Below, piece by piece: positions 4,377 to 59,780 of a stretch of 64,000 nucleotides of DNA (position 1 is its first letter; each line of letters opens with the position of its first letter). Both the position numbers and the translations under genes were made by a program. The stretch covers positions 124,001-188,000 of IMG/VR virus record IMGVR_UViG_3300048927_000250. The stretch is one strand, 5' to 3'. A model generated the notes under the pieces. The model had not been told where the DNA came from. It saw only the letters and a program-made list of their open reading frames with translations, and searched no databases.

Positions 4377-4440
4377 TCTTAATGTTCCATTTAGAAAGGA
4401 AAGGAATGGTAGGTTGTTCAAACCATTTCCTGGTGGTGTA

Positions 4441-4480
4441 AAAAAAGAAAATAAAACAAGGGGGCCGAAGCCCCCTTGTT
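4441..4480 (-). terminator. Intrinsic terminator (UUCG-type loop)
   Basis: AACAAGGGGG-CCGAAG-CCCCCTTGTT with a long U tract on the - strand. Confidence 0.85.
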
Positions 4481-4501
4481 CAAGCACTTACCGCAGACGA
4501 A

Positions 4502-5866
4502 TTAAGCTTCGTACTGAGACAGCGCTTTAGAGCCAGCGGCCATTGCAGCACGGAACACAGCGCAGCTGTGAGCAGTGAATGCAGTGTACGGCTCTTTGGT
4601 CCAGGTGACGTAGGAAGAACCGTACTGAACGGCCAGACGGGTGCAAGACTGGTTTTCCTGGTTGACTTTATCTTCGTCAACCTTACGGCTACCAATTTTG
4701 TCCGCTGCTTTGCGCACGTTCTCGCCAGCTTTTTCCATGTCCTTCAGGCCTTTGCCTTCGGTGTAACGCTTCATGGTTTCGCAACCACGGATAACTTCTT
4801 CCGCGATGTCGACAACCTGTGCAGGCGTCAGCACGTCCAGGCTGGCTTCTTCTGGGTCTTTCTGGTCTTTCTTCGTGTCCGCCATGAACACGGTAGAAGA
4901 TTGCAGACGACGCGCGAAGTCACGGCTGTCACCGTCAACGCTACCAGACCAGGTAGAGCAGAAGATGGTTTTACCGCCCAGGATTGGGTCAGATTCAGTC
5001 AGCTTGGTGTCTTTGCTGCTGAAACGGCTGTCAGAAGAAGACTTGTCAGCGTCAGCATCTTTAGACATGTTCTTAAACATGGTGTGGATGTGACCGTTCA
5101 GTTTCTTCAGACCGTCTTTCGCGTCTTCCGGGTCAAAGCTGTTCAGGCTGTCCGCCAGCTTCTCACCGATTTTCGCTACTTCCGGGCAATACTTGGTTGC
5201 CAGGGAGTTCAACGCGCCGTTGATGTCGCGCAGACCAGAAACCAGCTCAGCGCCGTTCTTAACCGGTTTGTCAGCGTAAGAAATCAGACGAGCAACAGAG
5301 CCGCTCACTTCGAATTTCTTCTCTTTAGAGTGCTTACCGGTCATGCCGCCAGCACGCTTTTTCAGGTCTTCGGCAGAACGCTTCAGCGCAGACAGACGAG
5401 AAGTCATTTTACGCCAGAAGGATTTCAGACGCTCGATGATTTTCTTAATCATGCGCTTGATGGTTTCGATGATGTTGCGAACAACTTCACGGAAGCCTTC
5501 AGTTGACACTTTAGAACCGATGTAGCTCTCAACCGCAGGCATCACGGTTTCAGCGCTTTCATCAGAACCGGCAGTCGCCAGGTCAGCAACCTGTTCAGCC
5601 AGAGCAACTTCACCTTCAGTTGCGCCGTCTTCTTTCTGGTTGATACCCTGCTCGATGTAATCGGCAGTTTCTTCGGTTTTGTCAGCCACGTCTTGCAGAC
5701 GGTAGACTTCGTCGAGCTCAGCGTCGGCCGCAGCCAAATCATTCGCTTGCTCTTCGACAATCAGTTCTGCTTCTTCGTTGCTGACTTCCGGCCAGCCCTC
5801 ATTAGAAACCTGAGAACCATAACCACGCAGACCACTTGAAATACGACCCATTTGGGTAATCTCCAT
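4502..5866 (-). CDS. Internal head (ejection) protein, phiKZ gp93-97 / SPN3US gp53-54 paralog family
   Basis: Acidic N-terminal propeptide with (S/A)xE sites (VSNE, AVE, VSTE), then the amphipathic basic helix IIETIKRMIKKIIERLKSFW. Confidence 0.8.
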   Translation of the reverse strand: MEITQMGRISSGLRGYGSQVSNEGWPEVSNEEAELIVEEQANDLAAADAELDEVYRLQDVADKTEETADYIEQGINQKEDGATEGEVALAEQVADLATAGSDESAETVMPAVESYIGSKVSTEGFREVVRNIIETIKRMIKKIIERLKSFWRKMTSRLSALKRSAEDLKKRAGGMTGKHSKEKKFEVSGSVARLISYADKPVKNGAELVSGLRDINGALNSLATKYCPEVAKIGEKLADSLNSFDPEDAKDGLKKLNGHIHTMFKNMSKDADADKSSSDSRFSSKDTKLTESDPILGGKTIFCSTWSGSVDGDSRDFARRLQSSTVFMADTKKDQKDPEEASLDVLTPAQVVDIAEEVIRGCETMKRYTEGKGLKDMEKAGENVRKAADKIGSRKVDEDKVNQENQSCTRLAVQYGSSYVTWTKEPYTAFTAHSCAVFRAAMAAGSKALSQYEA

Positions 5867-26527: not shown

Positions 26528-26573
26528 CGACTTCTTATAGCACTGGCAAAGTTAAGGTGAGGGAGCCTCTATA

Positions 26574-27206
26574 ATGGAAGCTAATCTGATGGGGTCGAGA
26601 AAGAAATCAAACGTCGTCGTGGACATTGACTTCGCAAACGCTGTAGTGGGCGACAAAACCCTGAGCAGTAAGATAGGTGGGTATAACTTCGTCCGGAAGG
26701 CCGGGACCGGTACCGCAAACGGCGATGATGGCGTTGTGGATGACCCAACGTACGGGAAGTGTTACCGTTTTAATGGCGTGACGTATTTTGAGGACGCAAT
26801 ATTACGTCCAGGTATCTGGAATAAAGAGTATCGCATCACCATCAGCTTCCAGAGTTTGTCCTCTCGGGCAGAGGCGGTATTCGGTACCGGGGATTATAAC
26901 CCTTCTCCTCAAGTAGGGTCGTCACTTAGCATTAACAACTACGCCAGCCAATGGATACAGTACTTCATGTGCAGTGGGGCTTACCAGAGGGTGCTATTAG
27001 ACGGTGCACGTCCAGCTGTCATGGAAACTCTGGTAATCACCCGGCGTTCAACGGGGATAACCATCGAGAGTACTCGAACGGGGCAAAAGAACACCTACCC
27101 AGACTTTAATACAGGTGGTGAAACCTTCTGGCGTATTGGCGTGGCTCAGAACCCGGCATACTGCTTCACGGGACTGTTAAAGTCGTTGAAGATTGAGTTG
27201 CTCTAG
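26574..27206 (+). CDS. Putative virion protein, ConA/LamG-like beta-sandwich, paralog 1
   Basis: Shares DxDFAxAxVGxK, GANGDxGVVxDPTYGKCYxFxG and FTGxLKSL with the next gene. Confidence 0.6.
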   Translation: MEANLMGSRKKSNVVVDIDFANAVVGDKTLSSKIGGYNFVRKAGTGTANGDDGVVDDPTYGKCYRFNGVTYFEDAILRPGIWNKEYRITISFQSLSSRAEAVFGTGDYNPSPQVGSSLSINNYASQWIQYFMCSGAYQRVLLDGARPAVMETLVITRRSTGITIESTRTGQKNTYPDFNTGGETFWRIGVAQNPAYCFTGLLKSLKIELL

Positions 27207-27217
27207 GGGAGTCAAAG

Positions 27218-27859
27218 ATGCTTGAATCTAACTTGTTCGGCGGGAAACACAAAAAAGTATTGTTGGACATCAACTTTGCTGATGCGGCCGTGGGCAGTAA
27301 AGTTATCACCGACTCTGGTCCCCTGGGGATACCGCTCACGCGTGCTGTCGTTGCAGGTGGTGCGAATGGAGACGGCGTAGTCAACGACCCCACGTATGGG
27401 AAGTGCTACTACTTCGATGGGTACGCGTATTTTCAGAACCTGTCACCGGTGTTGAATTTGGCGGACAGTAACTACGAGTTGACAATAGAGTTAGCGTTGG
27501 TGGGTAGTGGATTCATGTGCACGTTCGCTACGGGTGACTACCCGGCTGCCAACAACATCAAGAAAGGACTGGAGTTACTGCACAACCAACTCAGTCAGCC
27601 TATTCAGGTCTTCCAGACCACGGACGCGGGAGCGTTTCAACGCACTTACGGTTATGGTAGTGCCAATAACCAAATGTTGAAGCTCACGGTAAAAGAGGAC
27701 AGTACGAACATTACCGTCTCCAACAATCAAAACAGTAACCAGGCTGTTGCTGCCAGATTCCGGACTGGGGGTGATTCGTACCTGATGTTGGGGACGTCTC
27801 ACGGACTGGCTAACCGTTTCACGGGATACTTGAAGTCTCTACGGGTTGTCAAACTGTAA
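27218..27859 (+). CDS. Putative virion protein, ConA/LamG-like beta-sandwich, paralog 2
   Basis: Tandem paralog of 26574..27206; SD GGAG. Confidence 0.6.
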   Translation: MLESNLFGGKHKKVLLDINFADAAVGSKVITDSGPLGIPLTRAVVAGGANGDGVVNDPTYGKCYYFDGYAYFQNLSPVLNLADSNYELTIELALVGSGFMCTFATGDYPAANNIKKGLELLHNQLSQPIQVFQTTDAGAFQRTYGYGSANNQMLKLTVKEDSTNITVSNNQNSNQAVAARFRTGGDSYLMLGTSHGLANRFTGYLKSLRVVKL

Positions 27860-27900: not shown

Positions 27901-28363
27901 ATTCTCCATCCACCTCGTAAGGGTGGTGGACATCAATCTCTAAGTCAGTGGGGCCTAGAATGCGCTGTATCATCGGATAAACCTCCCAATGTTTCAGCCA
28001 CCCATTTCCACACCCGGGCATCGTCATCGCGATATCGAAGAGCCCACGCTGGTCATACGTGTCTCTGAGCTTAATCAGTCCCTGTTCAACCCACTCCATC
28101 TTAGACGGGGCTTTCCAGTCTACTTTAGTGGGGAACAACAGGATGATTTTTCCGTCGGGCATCCGCTCGCTGTACAACATGCCAATCTTGAACATCCCGG
28201 CGCGGCACCACTTACGGTACTTTTCGTAGAGGGCAGGATAGTTATCACGGCAATCCTTCGCAATCCCCGCACCCATCGCCCCAACGCAGTTCACCGTTAT
28301 CATGATGCACTCTTTATCAGTGTCCCAGATGTTCTGGTTCTTGAGCTTCCTGATGATTGCCAC
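27899..28363 (-). CDS. Macrodomain ADP-ribose hydrolase, DarG/TARG1-like
   Basis: VNCVGAMGAGIA, LFPTKVDWKAPS and IAMTMPGCGNG motifs. Confidence 0.9.
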   Translation of the reverse strand: MAIIRKLKNQNIWDTDKECIMITVNCVGAMGAGIAKDCRDNYPALYEKYRKWCRAGMFKIGMLYSERMPDGKIILLFPTKVDWKAPSKMEWVEQGLIKLRDTYDQRGLFDIAMTMPGCGNGWLKHWEVYPMIQRILGPTDLEIDVHHPYEVDGE

Positions 28364-28688
28364 TTTCTGATTTCTCCTTTATTTTTTCTACTAATCGCGT
28401 AATGGCATCGCCGCATTGGAAGATGACGTTGGTAAGATGACTGTGGTGCCCCAGTTTGTGGTGAATGGCTGTAACAAAATAGGGAAATTGTTCTTCGGTC
28501 GGGAACCAGCCGACGAACTGGTTCCACCCGATTCGAGCGACGTTGTCCTGGAGTAAATGTACTGCCACCATTGACTCAACGAGGTACCCCACTGTAATGA
28601 AATTGGAACCGGGTGAGACCTCATTCACTGAGACGAGATGTAACCCTTTCTCCTGACATTGGTAGTTATCAAAAACTTTAGGTTCCAT
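28317..28688 (-). CDS. Hypothetical protein
   Basis: 123 aa; SD AGGAG. Confidence 0.6.
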   Translation of the reverse strand: MEPKVFDNYQCQEKGLHLVSVNEVSPGSNFITVGYLVESMVAVHLLQDNVARIGWNQFVGWFPTEEQFPYFVTAIHHKLGHHSHLTNVIFQCGDAITRLVEKIKEKSESGNHQEAQEPEHLGH

Positions 28689-28703
28689 GAGCTGTCTCCT
28701 ACG

Positions 28704-28739
28704 AAAGAAAAAATAAGTAGGGGCAAAACGCCCCTACTT
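28704..28739 (-). terminator. Intrinsic terminator
   Basis: AAGTAGGGGC/GCCCCTACTT stem with a U tract on the - strand. Confidence 0.8.
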
Positions 28740-28849
28740 TCGGTTAAATTTCCCACCACGTATCGTTGGCTTTCGTGATGGTATCGGACCCCGACAAATG
28801 TGCTTTGTAATCTCTACGCATACAGAGTGGAGTCCAAGTAAAAAATAAC

Positions 28850-35286: not shown

Positions 35287-35302
35287 GTAATATATACTTT
35301 AA
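35287..35302 (-). promoter_or_regulatory. phiKZ-type early (virion RNAP) promoter
   Basis: TTAAAGTATATATTAC on the - strand, containing the established TATATTAC consensus. Confidence 0.75.
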
Positions 35303-47048: not shown

Positions 47049-49019
47049 TTAGCGACCGAAGCCGTAACCACCACGAGAGTTGAAGGTGTTACCGTTGTAG
47101 TTACCGGAACCGCCGAAACGGTTGTCGAAGTAACCACGACGAACGCTGTCTTGCAGCAGACCTTCAGTCGGGATGGTCAGGCCAGCTTTATCCACCGCCT
47201 GAGTCAGTTTGTACAGCCAGTCAGGGTTAATCTGAACCAGGTACGCATGACCAGTGATGGTGTAGCTGCCGGTAACGGAAGCGATGATTTCTTCCATTTT
47301 CGCCAGACGTGCTTCTTCGCTGATGTTGCGGTTCCAGCACGCGTCATCCCACATGGCAATCGCTTCGAGGTCGCGGTTCTTCGCCAGACCGAAGTGGGTC
47401 ATCATGAAGAAACGGTCCAGTTCACGCAGGTCACGGATACGACCTTTAGAATCGGTCCAGTGGCCCAGCAGGATGATGCGCTCTTCCAGAGCACCGAACG
47501 GAGTAGCTTCATCGAGGTAATCTTCGATGACGCCGCCGGTCAGACGGTGTGCCGCTTCCCACAGCTGGATACGAGCCTGACGGTGGTTCGGGTGCTTATC
47601 GTCAGCCGCTTCCAGGTACAGACGCTGGGTACGCGTTTGCAGGCCGGATTTTTCGATGTGCAGGAAGACGTTCAGAGAATCTTCCTGAACGACCGCTTCG
47701 TTCAGCTCAGCCCACTCAACTTCTGATGGGTCAGCTGGAATCGGCGGGTCAAACTCGACCAGCTGCTCAACTTCCAGAGCACGTGCATCACGCAGGTCAG
47801 CAGAATCGCCAACCGGGCGCAGAGATTTCACCAGGCAGTCTTCACGCATCAGAGCCGATACGGTGGACAGACCCAGCAGGTTCATCTCGGTAGTGAAGTT
47901 GTTGTTGGACGCAATCTTGGTCAGGTTCAGACCCAGTGCGTAGATGTCCAGCTCATCAACTTCACGACGACGTGCACGGCTACCGCCACGACGACGACCG
48001 CCATCTTTTGGACCCAGGTAGATGTAGTCGGTGAAACCGTCAATCTGCACCAGGTTAGAGTTACGGTTACCTTCCAGGGCGTTTACCTGACCTTTGCGGC
48101 CCGCAGGACCGGTAGTGACTTGCAGAGACAGGTCACGACGCAGTGGTTCGCCAAAGACGGTAGAGTCATCACCCGGTGCGTAAGTTACGCGACCGCTGAC
48201 TTCGTAGTTCTCTGGAATGATATCTTCCAGCTTGAACTGGTGGTCACCCTGAGTCAGCTCATCGTACATGCTGTACGCTGCGGTGTTAATCAGGTTGGTG
48301 ATAACTTCATCCACTTCACGCTCGGAGTAACCGAAGGTGACCGGAACGGTTACCGCACCGAAGAGGACAACCGGTACATCAGCACCCAGGCCAACGTTTT
48401 TCTGCACCTGATTGATGACGGAACCTTTGAAGCCTTCGGTCCACACATCGCTCGGTACCGCAGAGAACACGTAACGGCGCTGACCTTCAGTCACTTCCTG
48501 CTTAGGCAGCTGCTGGCGACCCATCATGACCGCAGTGATTGCGCCGACGAATTTCACGTCGCCGTAGGTAAAGGCCGCAGCCAGGACAACTGAGTCCAGC
48601 TGGAAACCAGTCAGATGACCCGGAACCGGAATCAGCTGCCACTTAGTTTTGCCACCCATGCTCAGACGGTTTTTGTTCGCTTCGAGGAACTTGTTACCCG
48701 CGTCGATGAATTTACCCATCTCGTCGCCGCCAGCGGCAGACTGAATCAGCGGTTGACCAGGATTGAACATGTTCAGGATATCGTTCATTGCAGTTTTCCC
48801 TTTATAGGCTTCTGTATTAGTTTCGGTTTGTGGTACATGACGAGCTGCGACAACTTCTTCTTCGTGAGGAGCTGACGCTTGGGTATTCGGTTGCTGCTGC
48901 GAGTGCTTTTTGGCACTCTGGTGTTGGCGATACTGAGCTAACGGGTTAGGCGGGTTTTGGCGTTTGCCTTCACCTTCATCCTTATTACCGTGTTCACTAT
49001 CACCAGAATTCCAACCCAT
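47049..49019 (-). CDS. chmA: Chimallin, major phage-nucleus shell protein (phiKZ gp54-like)
   Basis: 656 aa directly upstream of the nvRNAP beta' N subunit; GEPLRRD, IDGFTDYIY and LGHWTDSKGRIRDLRELD segments; disordered termini; strong SD and highly biased codons. Confidence 0.85.
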   Translation of the reverse strand: MGWNSGDSEHGNKDEGEGKRQNPPNPLAQYRQHQSAKKHSQQQPNTQASAPHEEEVVAARHVPQTETNTEAYKGKTAMNDILNMFNPGQPLIQSAAGGDEMGKFIDAGNKFLEANKNRLSMGGKTKWQLIPVPGHLTGFQLDSVVLAAAFTYGDVKFVGAITAVMMGRQQLPKQEVTEGQRRYVFSAVPSDVWTEGFKGSVINQVQKNVGLGADVPVVLFGAVTVPVTFGYSEREVDEVITNLINTAAYSMYDELTQGDHQFKLEDIIPENYEVSGRVTYAPGDDSTVFGEPLRRDLSLQVTTGPAGRKGQVNALEGNRNSNLVQIDGFTDYIYLGPKDGGRRRGGSRARRREVDELDIYALGLNLTKIASNNNFTTEMNLLGLSTVSALMREDCLVKSLRPVGDSADLRDARALEVEQLVEFDPPIPADPSEVEWAELNEAVVQEDSLNVFLHIEKSGLQTRTQRLYLEAADDKHPNHRQARIQLWEAAHRLTGGVIEDYLDEATPFGALEERIILLGHWTDSKGRIRDLRELDRFFMMTHFGLAKNRDLEAIAMWDDACWNRNISEEARLAKMEEIIASVTGSYTITGHAYLVQINPDWLYKLTQAVDKAGLTIPTEGLLQDSVRRGYFDNRFGGSGNYNGNTFNSRGGYGFGR

Positions 49020-49138
49020 TTCATTTCTCCTTAAACGTACTGTGACGTTACGGTCCTTAGAGAACCTTCTATGAATTTAGCTTTTCCGGAAAGACTAAAC
49101 GTTCGAATCAATTCCTATAAAGGACTCAATTCACTACA

Positions 49139-49156
49139 GTAATGTATGCCTGAAAA
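49139..49156 (-). promoter_or_regulatory. Early-type promoter of chmA
   Basis: TTTTCAGGCATACATTAC, one mismatch to TATATTAC. Confidence 0.6.
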
Positions 49157-49270
49157 AAGTTTCAAAAGGCACTTACTCCCGTTAATCCAGCATTGCCATT
49201 CTGGATGGCAATACTTTCTACATAAGATATATACAGTAACGTAAAAAATGATTACTGTACTGGGGGCGTC

Positions 49271-55824: not shown

Positions 55825-56280
55825 TTAGTACTCCTCACTGTCGGCGACGTAGAACCACTCGGCTGTCGGTTCCGGGTCTTCCAGGCAGTATGGGCTGATA
55901 ATGTTTAGAGGTATTAACAGTCGGTCAAATGAACGCCACAGTCGTTCGTAACCATGACGTTCAGCACCTCGGCCAGTAAAGCTGTTGGCAAAGGCCTGGA
56001 ACTCTTGCCACTGTCGTTCAGGTAAGTCGTTATCGTCACTTTCATGCGAGTCGATAAACAGCTCGTAGAAGTTGGTTTCCCACGCCATTATAAACTGCTC
56101 TTCCATTCGTTTGTCCCAACGAATTTCCAATGCGTTACGGCGGTAGAATCCTTGCATAGTTACCCAGGTTTCCAGCAAGGACTGATAGACCCATTGAAGG
56201 TCGAGGTTAATTGGAGTTCGGTCTAACGCATTCTGAAGGAAGCGTGGGACATCGAACCTATGTCCAGTAATCACGTACAT
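55825..56280 (-). CDS. Hypothetical protein, array member 2
   Basis: 151 aa; SD GGAGGT. Confidence 0.65.
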   Translation of the reverse strand: MYVITGHRFDVPRFLQNALDRTPINLDLQWVYQSLLETWVTMQGFYRRNALEIRWDKRMEEQFIMAWETNFYELFIDSHESDDNDLPERQWQEFQAFANSFTGRGAERHGYERLWRSFDRLLIPLNIISPYCLEDPEPTAEWFYVADSEEY

Positions 56281-56572
56281 CTACCTCCGTCATGCTCAAG
56301 AACCCACAGCTCAACTTCGGGTCCTTCACTGCGTGGACATACGACGGCAAATGCATGGCGCGTTTACCGTAAATGTTGCGCACTTTCTCGGCCACGAATA
56401 ACTCCCCGCCGCCGATGGCTCGATGGTCGAAGCCGTCCACAATCAGGTCGTTGTCCTTAACCAAGATGTACAGCAGGATATCCAGCAGGTTATAATTTTC
56501 CCCGTCAATGAGTTCGTAGCATACCTCTTCTATAAAACTGAGTCGCCCGTGACACTCAACGGTGAATCTCAT
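56258..56572 (-). CDS. Hypothetical protein, array member 1
   Basis: 104 aa; SD GAGG. Confidence 0.6.
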   Translation of the reverse strand: MRFTVECHGRLSFIEEVCYELIDGENYNLLDILLYILVKDNDLIVDGFDHRAIGGGELFVAEKVRNIYGKRAMHLPSYVHAVKDPKLSCGFLSMTEVDVRDYWT

Positions 56573-56714
56573 GTAACGCCTCTCGGTTCGCCATAATCAT
56601 CTCCACAACCCTCGCTGAGCGCTTTAAACTATCCGCCCTATACAAGGTTCCACATAACAGAGAAAACCGCGTAGAATTTAATACAGGCGGTTTCCTGAAT
56701 TTGTATTCATCTGG

Positions 56715-56731
56715 ATAATATATCCTTTAAA
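56715..56731 (-). promoter_or_regulatory. Early-type promoter for the small-gene array
   Basis: TTTAAAGGATATATTAT, a near match to TATATTAC with upstream TTTAA. Confidence 0.55.
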
Positions 56732-56759
56732 CTCTGTTAGTTAGGAAAGAAAATAAAAG

Positions 56760-57016
56760 AAGATATTCTGGTTACCTCACCGCTCGCGCTCGTAAGCCGA
56801 TTGTGTGGGTAACCAGGTATCTTGTCGTGCTTGTGGTCCCGTCCAGAGTCAGTCGCTGCAATAGCGCTTCGTCATCGCGGTTAACGCGAGTTCCCCGCTG
56901 GGAACTTAATGGCCGCAATTAAGCAGCTTGGGTTTTTTGGGGTACCTCTGCACGCAGGTGTTGACCAGACACCCCGCAGCTATTCCATCCAGAGAACAAC
57001 TACGTTAGCTTGCATA
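56760..57016 (-). ncRNA. Candidate structured non-coding RNA downstream of phuZ
   Basis: No ORF of 60 aa or more; six consecutive hairpins; TATG motifs at the 5' end; long 3' stem followed by a U-rich tract. Confidence 0.5.
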
Positions 57017-57053
57017 TTTGTACATATAATAGACTAAACCGCTAACGGTTCTC

Positions 57054-58022
57054 TTACGAAGAGAATTTAAAGCCGTCGTCGTTCAGACCAGCGGTATCCA
57101 GCACGTCAACGCTCTCACGTTGTTTACGGGCACGGGCCAGCGCTTCGAAGTTGTCCACGGTCTTTTGCAGGCCTGCAATCACACCCGCCAGGTCCTGGGT
57201 ATAGATGATGAAGTGCAGGTCGTTCTTTTCAGCTACGCGGCGATACCCTTCACAACCGTATTCAGACGGCAGAGATGGGTTGGCACCGTCCACTGAACCG
57301 TGCAGGCTGGCAACCGCCAGTGGGTATGGCAGCGACTTCGCATGGCTGTAGTCTGGGGTGATGTCCAGTAGCGCAACGCCTGGGCCGTTTTTCACGTTGA
57401 AGAAACGGTGTACGTCAGAGCTGTCGAGACGGTCGTGTTCGCCAGAGTACAGGTCAAGGATAGACAGCAAGCCCAGAACCATCTGTGCATCAACGTCGTT
57501 GTCCTGTGCCACAGAACCGTTATCTTCGTAGAAGACGACCGCAGTGGATTCGTTCTTCTTCGCGATACCGTTCAGGGTCTGCCAGGTATCCATGGTGTTT
57601 TTGGTGGTCTGGGAGTTTTCCGCAGAACCTACCACAAAGAACACGGTTGGTTTTTTCTGGCGCAGCAGTTCTTCAGCCAGTTTCGGTCCAATAACAGAAC
57701 CGGAACCGCCACCGCCTGAGAACACCAGAATGTTCAGGTCACCGGCAGGGTGGCTGACCAGCACGTCTGGGATGGCGCGGGCGATGGGGTGATAGTTGGT
57801 ACTGCGCTCTTTGCCAGAACCGTCGGTTGCACCCGGGATGATATAACAGTCTTCATCACGGAAGTTGGAACCGCCGATGGCGCTAAAGTTTGAACGAGAG
57901 GTATCGACGAAGTGGGCTTTCACTTCGGCCAGACCCGCGAGGTTTTTCTTCATCAGCAGGCTGACAATGTTGATACCAGTGCCGCCACAGCCATAGATGG
58001 AAACGGTGTTACGTGAGCTCAT
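57054..58022 (-). CDS. phuZ: PhuZ phage tubulin
   Basis: IYGCGGTGINI, VDTS, DGSGKER, tubulin signature SGGGGSGS, RLDSSD. Confidence 0.95.
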   Translation of the reverse strand: MSSRNTVSIYGCGGTGINIVSLLMKKNLAGLAEVKAHFVDTSRSNFSAIGGSNFRDEDCYIIPGATDGSGKERSTNYHPIARAIPDVLVSHPAGDLNILVFSGGGGSGSVIGPKLAEELLRQKKPTVFFVVGSAENSQTTKNTMDTWQTLNGIAKKNESTAVVFYEDNGSVAQDNDVDAQMVLGLLSILDLYSGEHDRLDSSDVHRFFNVKNGPGVALLDITPDYSHAKSLPYPLAVASLHGSVDGANPSLPSEYGCEGYRRVAEKNDLHFIIYTQDLAGVIAGLQKTVDNFEALARARKQRESVDVLDTAGLNDDGFKFSS

Positions 58023-58124: not shown

Positions 58125-58955
58125 ATGAGCGTCATCACGAAACTCATCGCTGATGTCAAAGCGGAAATCCCCCGTCAAGTCCTGGAAATTGCTTTCCTGG
58201 GTGACATGGGCCGGGAGAACCGTTTTGCCAGCAACCTCGACTTTCAGATTCGCCAGAAGGTCATTGACGCCCGTGTCTGGGTGGACTTAAGCCTTCAAGG
58301 TGCTGAAGAAGTCAACATCCCTCTGGCGCGTTGCGAAGTTGAGCAAGACGACCAGTACAAGACCATCATACGCATCCCAAAAGAATTGACGGGCGGGCGT
58401 ATCATCACGCAGGTATTAGCGTTCAACTATACCATCAACGGCGTGACCGGTATGACCAACAACGGGTATAACAACAACTCGTTTAACATGTCCAACGAAG
58501 GAAACTCCCCGCAAATGAACTCCGCGGCAAAGATTCTTCGTTCGGCATCCCCGGCACCTATCCTGGGGTCAGCGGCTACCCGTATCGTCGGGGAGAACGT
58601 AATTCTCCTGAACGATTACATGGGGTCGGTGAAGCAGGGTAATATGACCGTGCGTGTGGGACATGACCCGGAACTGAATACCTTCAAACCAACCAGTGTA
58701 AAACAGCTGTCGAAGTTTGTCGTGTACGCAGTGAAGGCGTATATCTACACCAACAGTGTGATTACGCTGGATATGGGTCATCTGTACGGTGGTAGTGAAA
58801 TCGGCCGTATCCGTGATATCATTGACGGGTATGCGGATTGTAATGAACTGTACAACACCTACTACGATGAAGAAATGATTGCGGTCAACTTCATGAACGA
58901 TGACACGCGTCACGGGAACTTCCTGCGCACCCTCATTGGCGGTGCTGCGTCGTAA
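58125..58955 (+). CDS. Conserved Chimalliviridae protein divergent from phuZ
   Basis: 276 aa; SD GGAG; EIPRQVLEIAF and AVKAYIY segments. Confidence 0.65.
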   Translation: MSVITKLIADVKAEIPRQVLEIAFLGDMGRENRFASNLDFQIRQKVIDARVWVDLSLQGAEEVNIPLARCEVEQDDQYKTIIRIPKELTGGRIITQVLAFNYTINGVTGMTNNGYNNNSFNMSNEGNSPQMNSAAKILRSASPAPILGSAATRIVGENVILLNDYMGSVKQGNMTVRVGHDPELNTFKPTSVKQLSKFVVYAVKAYIYTNSVITLDMGHLYGGSEIGRIRDIIDGYADCNELYNTYYDEEMIAVNFMNDDTRHGNFLRTLIGGAAS

Positions 58956-58993: not shown

Positions 58994-59001
58994 GCTGTTT
59001 G

Positions 59002-59388
59002 CTACGAAATCCAAGACAGCGCGATAACCTGTCGCTCAAAGTCTGTTTCCGCCAGGATTTTCTCGACGTCCTCTAACCATTTCAGATAATGTCTCTTGTC
59101 AGGGTCATCATCGTCAAGGGTTGTGATGGCGGTTTGTGCAATACGACGACTTTCCTCCAGCATCTCTTTAGTGAGCCGGTGGTAAGTACACTGGTCCATT
59201 CCGTTACAGAGTCCCACCAGAGTATCGCGAATCACGTAATGTTTGCGATAATAGAACAACTGGTCTTCTTTCCCTGACCCCGTATGGTAATCCACATGAC
59301 CTTGACCGGGCTTATCGTCGTGATAGTGTCCTTCATATTCTTCGAAGAACTCCCGGTCGAAACGTTCGATGTCAATATCCAGTCCCAT
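59002..59388 (-). CDS. Phage hypothetical protein
   Basis: 128 aa; MGLD...YYRKH pattern; TAATG coupling with SD AAGGAG. Confidence 0.65.
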   Translation of the reverse strand: MGLDIDIERFDREFFEEYEGHYHDDKPGQGHVDYHTGSGKEDQLFYYRKHYVIRDTLVGLCNGMDQCTYHRLTKEMLEESRRIAQTAITTLDDDDPDKRHYLKWLEDVEKILAETDFERQVIALSWIS

Positions 59389-59780
59389 TACTGCTCCTTA
59401 CCAATCAAATTTCTGAAACTATTTACCGATATCGACCTGAAAAACTTCTTCAGTGTCTTAAATACACTCGGCACCTTGTCTGCGTACAGGGTGACCTGCA
59501 TGACATGAAAGTCGATACCTTCAGATTCAAACTGAATAGAACGCCCTAATGGTGATAGCGGCTCGTCCGCCATAGCTTCCAGAACTGCCGCCATGTGCGC
59601 TTTGATATCTTTGATGCGCGGGTGAGTCTTGTGGATAATCGCGTAGGCGTCCTTTAATTTACGGGTGTCTTCCGGGAGAATATCACGGCCGGTCAACATG
59701 ATGCAGACGGGAGAAAACTGGACGCCATCCACTTTTAATGTCGTGGCGAGTTCGTCACCCACAAATACCTTCTTACTCAT
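59388..59780 (-). CDS. Hypothetical protein
   Basis: Start probably ATG 59780 (MSKKV), SD GAGGT. Confidence 0.6.
   Translation of the reverse strand: MSKKVFVGDELATTLKVDGVQFSPVCIMLTGRDILPEDTRKLKDAYAIIHKTHPRIKDIKAHMAAVLEAMADEPLSPLGRSIQFESEGIDFHVMQVTLYADKVPSVFKTLKKFFRSISVNSFRNLIGKEQ

What the first reader, a model, noticed from the sequence alone, without database searches (positions are those of the whole stretch)
56760..57030. Multi-hairpin non-coding RNA candidate directly downstream of phuZ
Seen: an ORF-free ~480 bp gap in a densely coding genome. On the - strand, after TATG motifs (57013-57016 and 57023-57026), come consecutive stems: GGUGU/ACACC, GCUGC/GCGGC, AGUUCCC/GGGAACU, UCGCG/CGCGA and CGCU/AGCG. 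The GCUGC/GCGGC stem uses a G-U pair that works only on the - strand. These stems may be enclosed by an imperfect closing helix (CGU..UUGUUCUC / GGGA..ACAA..ACG), and CUCUGGAYGG occurs twice. A long CUGGUUACC/GGUAACCAG stem and U-rich tail end the segment. Established: TATG marks phiKZ late transcription starts. Inference: a discrete ~250-nt structured RNA. It matches no RNA family I recognise.
Basis: partly seen in the sequence, partly recalled or inferred. Interest (0 to 1): 0.8.

Follow-up and report, generated by a model that had tools for sequence, protein, structure and literature searches.

The report
Candidate structured RNA downstream of phuZ
A protein-free stretch of about 265 bases after the tubulin gene of an Erwinia jumbo phage looks like a separately transcribed, folded RNA carrying one swappable 66-base module, but neither its transcription nor its function is proven.

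Summary
The window is an Iapetusvirus (Erwinia phage PhiEaH1 type, 99.5% identical). Only the proposed "closing helix" fails: it competes with a far better 12-bp hairpin and is absent from the second allele.

The layout is phuZ stop, weak hairpin, two TATG motifs (phiKZ-type late promoter, G = +1), four stable hairpins, a 66-nt segment, an 18-bp terminator with U-tail, then an early-type promoter.

Rfam, tRNA, ORF, Pfam and PHROG searches find nothing. Folding is stronger on the - strand (z -3.6 against -2.4), but that is only about the top 10% of this genome.

New result: in phage vB_Ea277G the segment between hairpin H4 and the terminator is completely replaced, while flanks are about 99% identical.

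Six of the seven other enterobacterial nucleus-forming genera examined have a TATG-type motif in the ORF-free stretch after phuZ (five as TATGTA; five end in a strong terminator), with no detectable sequence homology to this one. In Moabite versus Totoro that unit is better conserved (88%) than its flanking genes (67-78%).

Transcript evidence is one 207-nt contig from a wastewater cDNA library, which is suggestive only.

Verdict: plausible late non-coding RNA gene of unknown function, and a new member of a known kind.

The parts
57054..58022 (-). phuZ (tubulin-like, 322 aa), the gene upstream of the unit
   Evidence: ORF. Pfam Tubulin hit. Annotated 'tubulin PhuZ' in NC_023610.
57036..57051 (-). 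T1, a weak hairpin (GAACCG/CGGUUU) just after the phuZ stop codon
   Evidence: Terminator-like site. The only change in Ea277G is in its loop. In the strain seen in run X26 this segment is replaced, and identity to the window begins at 57036.
57013..57026 (-). Two TATG motifs (57026-57023 and 57016-57013); putative late, nvRNAP-type promoter with G as +1
   Evidence: phiKZ late-promoter consensus from PMC4666361. TATG-type motifs follow phuZ in 6 of the 7 other genera examined, 5 of them as TATGTA. The cDNA-library contig starts at 57010.
56975..57004 (-). H1, a 12-bp hairpin with 4 G.U pairs and loop CUGGAU
   Evidence: (P 0.97). The G.U pairs would be A.C mismatches on the + strand.
56956..56974 (-). 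H2, hairpin GGGUGU/ACACCU
   Evidence: P 0.88.
56928..56955 (-). Linker rich in A and C (CCCCAAAAAACCC), mostly unpaired
   Evidence: It pairs with the cassette only in the window allele.
56912..56927 (-). H3, hairpin GCUGC/GCGGC with one U.G pair
   Evidence: P 0.99. Ea277G differs only in the loop.
56889..56906 (-). H4, hairpin AGUUCCC/GGGAACU with loop AGCG
   Evidence: P 0.93. It is the 5' boundary of the replaced block.
56824..56889 (-). Variable cassette: 66 nt here and 68 unrelated nt in vB_Ea277G. It folds on its own in both alleles.
   Evidence: There are 40 differences in one 100-nt bin against 0-12 in the other bins of the 6.6 kb compared (0-1 in the 1.7 kb downstream, 1-4 in the 0.5 kb upstream).
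56744..56823 (-). T2, an extended terminator: about 18-bp stem with inner UACG-capped hairpin (56823-56760), then the U-rich tail CUUUUAUUUUCUUUCC
   Evidence: I4; P 0.89-0.99. Identical in both alleles.
56712..56728 (-). Early-type promoter-like motif AAGGATATATTATCC for the downstream operon
   Evidence: The same motif occurs at 35294 and 40888. Counterparts in SPLA10, PCH45, Moabite, KpLz-2_45 and Eowyn.
56650..56696 (-). Second hairpin-plus-TATG module (T3 at 56696-56661; TATG at 56656-56653), a 20-nt 80% direct repeat of the T1/TATG-1 module
   Evidence: (D1, I3).
56258..56572 (-). Downstream 104-aa ORF, first gene of the small-gene operon
   Evidence: No Pfam or PHROG hit. Weak similarity to Moabite gp028.

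Best explanation
The segment from about 57023/57013 to about 56750 (- strand) is a small independent gene for a structured non-coding RNA of about 265-275 nt.

Proposed mechanism. The phage's non-virion RNA polymerase starts at the G of one of two TATG motifs placed just behind the phuZ hairpin. It transcribes a constant 5' scaffold (hairpins H1-H4 plus an A/C-rich single-stranded linker), then a 66-nt module that differs completely between strains. It stops at a very stable terminator with a U-tail, just ahead of the early-type promoter of the next operon. The RNA then acts as RNA, in trans. The scaffold and terminator provide stability and probably a protein-binding platform. The exchangeable module is the specificity-determining part, serving either as a pairing or decoy surface or as a dispensable peripheral domain.

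Shown: the sequence anatomy, the absence of coding potential, the strand-specific hairpins, the allele replacement, and the recurrence of the same architecture after phuZ in other genera.

Inferred: that the TATG motifs fire and are late, that T2 terminates, that the RNA accumulates, and everything about its target.
For: Anatomy and non-coding status:
- All hairpins are verified with high pair probabilities.
- H1 has 4 G.U pairs and H3 has 1, so both exist only on the - strand. The sense z-score (-3.56) beats the antisense (-2.37) in both alleles.
- H1 is a 12-bp non-terminator hairpin, rare by chance.
- No ORF is conserved between alleles and there is no family hit.

Promoter and terminator:
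- TATG with G = +1 is the experimentally defined phiKZ late-promoter core (PMC4666361).
- 'Hairpin, T-run, TATG' modules recur throughout this genome.
- A TATG-type motif follows phuZ in Moabite, Totoro, FBKp24, KpLz-2_45, Proteus phage 10, SPLA10 and PCH45 (as TATGTA in all but SPLA10 and Proteus phage 10). In each case 70-330 ORF-free nt follow; Moabite/Totoro, FBKp24, KpLz-2_45, Proteus phage 10 and PCH45 have a strong terminator, and five genera then an early-type promoter.

Selection on the counterpart unit:
- Moabite versus Totoro: 88.4% identity in the unit, against 77.6% in the phuZ 3' end and 66.7% in the downstream CDS.
- Two both-sided compensatory changes and five wobble-compatible changes that fit only the sense strand.

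Modularity:
- The only divergent block in 6.6 kb of otherwise about 99% identical sequence lies exactly between H4 and T2.
- It is one of only five local replacements in 64 kb, and the only one wholly inside a non-coding unit.

Transcript hint:
- Wastewater cDNA runs X11, X12 and X13 hold 58-65% of the sampled words of 56765-57030 and none of the rest of the gap; a fourth run of that study, X27, holds 58% of the words of 56765-57030.
- X11 gives a single 207-nt contig, 56806-57010, starting 3 nt after the second TATG, and nothing else in 5.9 kb.
Against: - There is no direct evidence of a transcript end. The X11 library is flagged 'probably DNA', its depth is 2.5, and the runs were selected because they hold this stretch. 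A low-coverage DNA run (X14) shows similar isolated contigs.
- TATG is necessary but not sufficient in phiKZ (PMC4666361), and its 'late' meaning in Iapetusvirus rests on analogy.
- The folding z-score is only about the top 10% for this genome.
- There is no covariation within the genus, because there is no variation.
- Homology to the other genera's units is not detectable by nhmmer, by a covariance model of the Moabite core, or by shuffled Smith-Waterman. The cross-genus support is therefore positional only.
- Covariation in Moabite/Totoro rests on 3 sequences and is not statistically distinguishable from shuffles.
- The apparent conservation in the X26 strain reflects a divergent phuZ allele, not special conservation of the RNA.
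- No target was found among 72 phage translation-initiation regions in the window.
Confidence: 0.45

Rival explanations
1. A cis-acting junction rather than an RNA gene. The structured stretch is the long 3' UTR of phuZ (T1 being leaky and T2 the real terminator), and/or a late leader whose terminator insulates or attenuates transcription into the early operon. Any short RNA is a by-product, as with the UTR-derived species seen in phiKZ.
For: - T1 is weak: 6 bp with a poor tail.
- Two more 'TATG, short ORF-free hairpin stretch, terminator-like hairpin' units lie directly upstream of genes in this window, at 49224-49100 and about 28822-28700. This suggests a general regulatory design.
- phiKZ has 17 candidate RNAs derived from 5' UTRs by premature termination, plus 3' UTR-derived ones (PMC10914365, PMC8545117).
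- The length and sequence of the unit vary freely between genera, from 70 to 330 nt, as expected if only the signals matter.
Against: - A second TATG module (56656-56653) and an early-type promoter already serve the downstream ORF, so a leader from TATG-1 is not needed.
- An insulator does not need about 190 nt of extra stable hairpins.
- The Moabite/Totoro unit is more conserved than its flanking genes along its whole length, not only at the signals.
Confidence: 0.3
2. A DNA-level element: a recombination hot spot or module boundary (analogous to the promoter/stem-loop cassettes that shuffle genes in T4-type phages), or a promoter-primed replication origin with an adjacent AT-rich tract.
For: - The unit from TATG-1 to the early promoter is bracketed by 20-nt, 80% direct repeats of a hairpin-plus-TATG module (D1).
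- The phuZ allele boundary in the X26 strain falls at 57036/57037.
- The cassette swap lies between two hairpins.
- An AT-rich tract (GC 0.415) follows T2.
Against: - There are no iterons or other repeat arrays.
- There is no GC-skew or composition signal beyond that of an ordinary intergenic region.
- G.U-dependent helices and sense-specific wobble changes point to RNA, not duplex DNA.
- Recombination at module edges is compatible with an RNA gene as well.
Confidence: 0.1
3. A decaying remnant of a lost small late gene, or neutral spacer whose hairpins are incidental.
For: - The folding signal is not exceptional for this genome.
- There is no homolog outside the genus.
- A 66-nt block can be swapped without obvious constraint.
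Against: - No residual ORF similarity was found.
- The - strand bias of the helices.
- The rarity of H1-type hairpins.
- The recurrence of the architecture across genera, and above-background conservation in Moabite/Totoro.
Confidence: 0.1
4. It encodes a small protein: the 42-aa + strand ORF at 56909-57037, or the 48-aa - strand ORF at 56772-56918.
For: The 42-aa antisense ORF is intact in both alleles with one I-to-V change.
Against: - No Pfam or PHROG hit.
- The - strand ORF starts with TTG and is broken in Ea277G.
- The stop codon of the + strand ORF is altered in the X26 strain.
- No promoter is evident for the + strand.
Confidence: 0.03

Closest known systems
phiKZ UTR-associated ncRNA candidates (Grad-seq, Gerovac 2021, PMC8545117; ONT-cappable-seq, Putzeys 2024, PMC10914365)
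   Same: A nucleus-forming jumbo phage. Short, structured RNAs of 100-200 nt with no ORF, bounded by a phage promoter or processing site and a hairpin terminator, lying next to protein genes. Function unknown.
   Different: - They are not homologous and not at the same locus. In phiKZ, phuZ (PHIKZ039) is followed after 54 nt by PHIKZ040.
- The published '5' UTR of p40' RNA belongs to locus tag PHIKZ_p40, not to gp40.
- The phiKZ species were detected experimentally, whereas this one was not.
- No strain-specific cassette has been reported for them.
Late-accumulating ncRNA1/ncRNA2 of Pseudomonas phage PAK_P3 (cited in PMC10914365)
   Same: Phage-encoded structured RNAs of about 120-210 nt, abundant late in infection, of unknown function.
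   Different: Those lack their own start site and derive from 3' UTR processing. They belong to a different phage family, and no sequence relation was tested or is expected.
Enterobacterial Hfq-type base-pairing sRNAs (established knowledge)
   Same: A stand-alone promoter, single-stranded stretches, and a Rho-independent terminator with U-tail. The short counterparts in FBKp24 and KpLz-2_45 (about 40 nt single-stranded plus terminator) look like classic sRNAs.
   Different: - This RNA is much longer and more structured.
- No conserved seed exists.
- No target was found among phage start regions.
- Hfq binding is untested.
- Transcription would occur inside the phage nucleus by a phage polymerase.
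Promoter/stem-loop modular cassettes (PeSL) of T4-type phages (own knowledge: Arbiol et al. 2010; not checked here)
   Same: Repeated promoter-plus-hairpin modules flank exchangeable segments. The cassette and the whole unit are bounded by hairpins and by a 20-nt repeated hairpin/TATG module.
   Different: PeSLs carry early promoters and shuffle ORFs. Here the swapped piece is 66 nt of non-coding sequence inside a putative RNA.
phi29 packaging RNA (own knowledge)
   Same: A phage-encoded structured RNA whose structure and position, rather than sequence, are shared between relatives.
   Different: pRNA is confined to phi29-like podoviruses, is made from an early promoter at the genome end, and needs complementary loops for ring formation. 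No such loop pair is evident here beyond AU-only four-base palindromes, and there is no evidence of portal association.

Membership tests
Any Rfam 15 family (riboswitches, ribozymes, introns, CRISPR-DR, 6S, tmRNA, GOLLD/ROOL/HEARO and others) | Covariance-model score at or above the family's gathering threshold | tested here: not met
   The whole window at gathering thresholds gave 0 hits. The region 56300-57300 at E<=10 gave only two noise hits, 15.8 and 14.4 bits against cut-offs of 140 and 70.
tRNA / tmRNA | Cloverleaf or tmRNA fold detected by ARAGORN | tested here: not met
   0 genes in the window.
phiKZ-type late (nvRNAP) transcription unit | TATG motif whose G is the start site | tested here: inconclusive
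   Two TATG motifs are present, and a TATG-type motif recurs after phuZ in 6 of the 7 other genera examined. [quoted passage not shown] The only start-site hint is a contig beginning at 57010.
phiKZ-type late (nvRNAP) transcription unit | Accumulation late in infection | not testable with these tools
   No time-resolved RNA-seq of an Iapetusvirus infection was available.
Intrinsic terminator | G+C-rich stem directly followed by a U-tract | tested here: met
   About 18 bp (56823-56760) followed by CUUUUAUUUU. The simple scan missed it only because its loop exceeds 8 nt.
UTR-derived phage ncRNA by premature termination (the phiKZ kind) | Promoter, then terminator, ahead of a same-strand downstream CDS with no ORF between | tested here: met
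   However, an early-type promoter and a second TATG lie between T2 and the CDS.
UTR-derived phage ncRNA by premature termination (the phiKZ kind) | Longer read-through transcript sharing the same 5' end | not testable with these tools
   Contigs carry no transcript ends.
Post-phuZ RNA of Moabitevirus (Moabite/Totoro unit) | Sequence or structure homology to the Moabite core | tested here: not met
   - nhmmer gave no cross-genus hit.
- Covariance model R1 gave no hit in the window.
- Smith-Waterman gave p = 0.07.
- The shared ATTAAGTTCC and ACAAGATA are at chance level.
Post-phuZ RNA of Moabitevirus (Moabite/Totoro unit) | Same position and architecture: TATG-type motif after phuZ, ORF-free stretch, strong terminator, early-type promoter | tested here: met
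Hfq-type trans-acting sRNA | Conserved single-stranded seed with complementary targets | tested here: not met
   No segment is conserved beyond the genus. The best duplex energies with 72 phage start regions equal the shuffled expectation. Host targets were not testable.
CRISPR repeat mimic / mini-array | Near-identical copy of a host CRISPR repeat, or two repeats flanking a spacer | tested here: not met
   - No CRISPR-DR family hit at E<=10.
- No repeat flanks the cassette.
- No match in E. coli genomes.
- The resemblance of H4 to type I-E repeats is recalled from memory only and lacks 6 nt of the repeat stem.
Diversity-generating retroelement variable region | Differences confined to adenine positions of a template repeat; a reverse transcriptase nearby | tested here: not met
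   The two alleles differ at all base types (about 39% identity). There is no second copy in the window.

The most novel reading that the evidence does not exclude
The unit is a modular, strain-programmable phage RNA. It has a constant scaffold and terminator that recruit a protein partner, and an exchangeable 66-nt module that sets specificity (a decoy or pairing surface used in phage-host or phage-phage conflict). Functionally equivalent but sequence-unrelated RNAs would occupy the same post-phuZ slot across enterobacterial nucleus-forming phages.
Probability: 0.1. Interest if true: 0.8.

Novelty: new member of a known kind. Interest (0 to 1): 0.42.

Why it matters
Non-coding RNAs of nucleus-forming jumbo phages are almost unexplored; a few candidates exist in phiKZ and none has a known function. 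If this unit is a real RNA gene, it would give a conserved, easily located slot directly after phuZ in which to look for such RNAs across enterobacterial chimalliviruses. It would also provide a natural two-allele system (PhiEaH1 versus vB_Ea277G) for testing what the exchangeable module does. If it is only a regulatory junction, it still documents how late and early transcription units are insulated from each other in these genomes.

Tried and rejected
1. The phiKZ '5' UTR of p40' ncRNA as positional orthologue: rejected. In phiKZ, phuZ is followed after 54 nt by PHIKZ040, and 'p40' is a different locus tag.

2. Cross-genus homology: none significant.
 - MAFFT alignment, nhmmer, covariance model of the Moabite core and Smith-Waterman with shuffles.
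 - The shared ATTAAGTTCC/ACAAGATA and TTAAGT motifs are at chance level.
 - A pattern scan built from them in IMG/VR found only 2050HW, the window's own contig and three copies of one unrelated AT-rich phage.

3. More alleles or relatives: only two alleles are known.
 - PhuZ-based locus search in IMG/VR found only the window's own contig, and none in JGI metagenomes.
 - Scaffold patterns found nothing new in IMG/VR, metagenomes or GTDB genomes.
 - Exact-protein look-ups gave only contigs carrying the window allele.

4. Origin or target of the cassette.
 - No match in phages, plasmids or E. coli genomes.
 - The Ea277G cassette is absent from IMG/VR.
 - A 22-mer of the window cassette matches an rsmD coding sequence in a Burkholderiaceae MAG. 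About 0.07 such hits are expected by chance and the flanks are unrelated, so I treat it as chance.
 - No outlier pairing with phage start regions.

5. Paralogues in the window: none.

6. Iterons, or an origin-type skew signal: none.

7. Antiterminator reading. The linker GAGGUACCC resembles the T2 3' strand (D6), but about 3.6 such near-repeats are expected by chance. Not pursued.

8. CsrA-type GGA sponge: 5 GGA in 262 nt against 4 expected (by eye). Rejected.

9. Conservation argument from the X26 strain: rejected. The outlier there is a divergent phuZ allele, not the RNA.
Full report
IDENTITY AND CONTEXT

The window is an Iapetusvirus.
- The region 56400-57400 is 99.5% identical to Erwinia phage PhiEaH1 and 95.4% identical to vB_Ea277G. 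No other phage record matches at the DNA level.
- The window is identical to JGI contig 3300048927 Ga0496124_0000077.
- The gap 56573-57053 lies between phuZ (57054-58022, - strand; Pfam Tubulin) and a 104-aa ORF (56258-56572, - strand). No feature is annotated there in either GenBank record.

CHECKING THE OBSERVATION

Two corrections follow.
- The 'closing helix' is not supported. Its 5' strand belongs to hairpin H1 (57004-56993 / 56986-56975), which has 12 uninterrupted pairs, four of them G.U, and a mean pair probability of 0.97. Its 3' strand lies in a segment that a sister phage replaces completely.
- The terminator is longer than described. AAGAUA (56823-56818) pairs with UAUCUU (56765-56760), so about 18 bp precede the U-tail.

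The statistical weight is moderate.
- The putative transcript has z = -3.56, against -2.37 for its complement. The second allele behaves the same way (-3.09 against -1.87).
- Windows of 249 nt across this genome average -1.3 (sd 1.7), and 5 of 48 reach -3.5.
- Uninterrupted hairpins of 12 bp or more number about 15 on this strand of the 64 kb, against about 3 in shuffles. Most are terminators. H1 is one of the non-terminator ones and is rich in G.U pairs.

No known family or coding signal was found.
- Rfam and ARAGORN found nothing.
- ORF comparison between alleles found no conserved ORF.
- Pfam and PHROGs gave no hit.

ANATOMY ON THE - STRAND

Reading 5' to 3', the elements are:
1. The phuZ stop codon.
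2. Weak hairpin T1 (57051-57036).
3. TATG at 57026-57023 and at 57016-57013.
4. Hairpins H1 and H2.
5. An A/C-rich linker.
6. Hairpins H3 and H4.
7. A 66-nt segment (56889-56824).
8. Terminator T2 with its U-tail (to about 56744).
9. An early-type promoter-like motif, AAGGATATATTATCC (56728-56712). The same motif occurs at 35294 and 40888.
10. Hairpin T3 and a third TATG (56656-56653). This module is a 20-nt, 80% direct repeat of the T1/TATG-1 module.
11. The downstream ORF.

In phiKZ, TATG with its G as +1 is the core of late promoters. It is necessary but not sufficient (PMC4666361). 'Hairpin, T-run, TATG' modules recur through this genome.

A NEW OBSERVATION: AN EXCHANGEABLE MODULE

I aligned the window, PhiEaH1, the IMG/VR contig and vB_Ea277G.
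- The flanks are essentially identical.
- The 66 nt between H4 and T2 are replaced in vB_Ea277G by 68 unrelated nt (about 39% identity). That replacement folds on its own into a different shape.
- Along 6.6 kb the two phages differ at 0-12 positions per 100 nt (0-1 in the 1.7 kb downstream of the cassette, 1-4 in the 0.5 kb upstream), but at 40 positions in this one bin.
- Across the whole 64 kb (98.2% identity) there are only five local replacements. This is the only one that lies wholly inside a non-coding unit.
- A third strain, seen in run X26, has a phuZ allele only about 86% identical but the same cassette. Its boundary of identity lies at 57036/57037, just upstream of the first TATG.

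The cassette is therefore exchanged independently of the genomic background. Neither cassette matches anything else in phages, plasmids, E. coli genomes or IMG/VR. One 22-mer hit in a Burkholderiaceae rsmD gene is best read as chance.

RELATIVES

PhuZ homologues occur in 196 phage records. The nearest outside the genus are about 43% identical. I compared the sequence downstream of phuZ in eight further phages from seven other genera.
- Moabite, Totoro, FBKp24, KpLz-2_45, Proteus phage 10, SPLA10 and PCH45 show a TATG-type motif, followed by 70-330 nt without an ORF. Five of them have it as TATGTA and within 4-12 nt of the phuZ stop; in SPLA10 it is TATATATG about 100 nt after the stop, and in PCH45 small ORFs lie between phuZ and the motif. 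Moabite/Totoro, FBKp24, KpLz-2_45, Proteus phage 10 and PCH45 end the stretch with a strong terminator, and SPLA10, PCH45, Moabite/Totoro and KpLz-2_45 follow it with an early-type promoter.
- Eowyn has only a CATATG after the phuZ terminator and no second terminator, although an early-type promoter follows. Goslar (small ORF) and phiKZ (54-nt gap) lack such a unit.
- The units fold well: sense z-scores run from -2.3 to -4.9, and sense beats antisense in five of nine.
- Sequence homology between genera is not detectable. Only FBKp24 and KpLz-2_45 match each other.

Within Moabitevirus there is informative divergence between Moabite and Totoro.
- The unit is 88.4% identical, against 77.6% for the phuZ 3' end, 79.6% for the following promoter region and 66.7% for the downstream CDS.
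- The changes include two both-sided compensatory substitutions, one in an internal hairpin and one in the terminator. There are also five one-sided G.U-compatible changes that work only on the sense strand, against two breaks.
- With three sequences this cannot be distinguished statistically from shuffles.

My reading is that a structured RNA after phuZ is under selection in at least one sister genus. The Iapetusvirus unit is its positional counterpart. Common descent is unproven.

TRANSCRIPTION EVIDENCE

Two searches of public runs found holders of this stretch.
- Wastewater cDNA runs X11, X12 and X13 (one study) hold 58-65% of the sampled words of 56765-57030 and none from the remaining 215 nt of the gap. 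X27, from the same study, was found only by the shorter query and holds 58% of its words.
- The one run I could lay, X11, gives a single 207-nt contig at 56806-57010 with no differences, and nothing else in 5.9 kb.
- This fits an RNA that starts at the second TATG.

The caveats are serious.
- The library may contain DNA, and the tool says 'probably DNA'.
- Depth is 2.5.
- The runs were selected for holding this stretch.
- A low-coverage run of unrecorded type (X14) shows similar isolated contigs.
- The metatranscriptome runs (X26 and others) cover genes and gap alike and say nothing about transcript ends.

WHAT IT MOST LIKELY IS

Best explanation (0.45): a small late transcription unit that makes a structured non-coding RNA of about 265-275 nt and acts as RNA. 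It would have a constant scaffold, an exchangeable module and a strong terminator.

Main rival (0.30): a cis-acting junction. Under this reading the stretch is a long phuZ 3' UTR and/or a late leader whose terminator insulates the early operon. It is supported by two similar 'TATG, hairpin, terminator' units elsewhere in the window (49224-49100 and about 28822-28700) and by the UTR-derived RNAs of phiKZ (PMC8545117, PMC10914365).

Lesser rivals:
- A DNA-level recombination or origin element (0.10). There are no iterons and no skew signal.
- A relic with no function (0.10).
- A small protein (0.03).

COMPARISON WITH WHAT IS KNOWN

The closest known things are the experimentally detected but functionally unexplained ncRNA candidates of phiKZ and PAK_P3. 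This unit is neither homologous to them nor at the same locus.

The lead that phiKZ's '5' UTR of p40' RNA sits next to phuZ was checked and is wrong.

Literature searches found no description of an RNA after phuZ or of ncRNAs in Iapetusvirus.

NOVELTY AND VERDICT

The unit is real as sequence anatomy, plausible as an RNA gene and unproven as a transcript. It is a new member of a known kind: phage-encoded, promoter- and terminator-bounded structured RNA candidates. It has one unusual feature, the strain-specific module. I score interest at about 0.4. It would rise sharply if the RNA is confirmed and the module proves to set specificity.

Noticed in passing
window 49100-49224 (- strand): Another unit of the same design. 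TATGTAG is followed by an 11-bp hairpin and a terminator-like hairpin with a U-run, then an early-promoter-like ACATTACTGTAGTGAA, all upstream of the 656-aa ORF 47049-49019. The 135-nt stretch folds with z = -3.9.
   Followed up: partly
window about 28700-28822 (- strand), and 28405-28703: TATG is followed by about 105 ORF-free nt and a strong terminator that abuts the RBS of ORF 28317-28688. The adjoining 28405-28703 is one of the two stretches that do not align at all with vB_Ea277G.
   Followed up: no
window 59000-59778: About 780 bp have no blastn counterpart in vB_Ea277G, which carries different genes there (783-nt and 561-nt CDSs where PhiEaH1 has gp036/gp037). This is a gene-level module swap about 2 kb from the RNA.
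   Followed up: no
window 57037-57710 (run X26): A third strain in a metatranscriptome of a eukaryotic host sample carries a phuZ allele only about 86-90% identical, while sequence on both sides is 98-100% identical. The recombination boundary lies at 57036/57037, between the phuZ hairpin and the first TATG.
   Followed up: partly
window 57023-57042 and 56651-56670: A 20-nt direct repeat (80% identity) of a 'hairpin 3' arm, T-run, TATG' module brackets the RNA unit together with the early-type promoter. It looks like a duplicated regulatory module or an insertion scar.
   Followed up: partly
window 26560-26739 and 27173-27305: Two short hyper-divergent blocks relative to vB_Ea277G (71 of 180 and 53 of 139 positions) lie inside the ORFs 26574-27206 and 27218-27859.
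   Followed up: no
window 4401-4649 (- strand): This is the most strongly folding 249-nt window sampled (z = -8.3 with 40 shuffles, -5.3 with 200). It contains the 12-bp GC-rich terminator at 4481-4454 with a long U-tail at the end of ORF 4502-5866, plus structure in the CDS 3' end. It is probably an ordinary terminator.
   Followed up: partly
L027 2230-2251 (Burkholderiaceae MAG DATLOA010000078.1): An exact 22-nt match to the window cassette (56873-56852) lies inside an rsmD-like coding sequence upstream of coaD. The flanks are unrelated, and about 0.07 such hits are expected by chance in that collection.
   Followed up: partly
window 58125-58955 (+ strand): The gene divergent from phuZ is a DUF7484 protein (E = 1.5e-92). 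Its Moabite counterpart is annotated as a phiKZ gp042-like head protein. The divergent pair is syntenic in all seven other enterobacterial genera examined, but not in phiKZ.
   Followed up: partly
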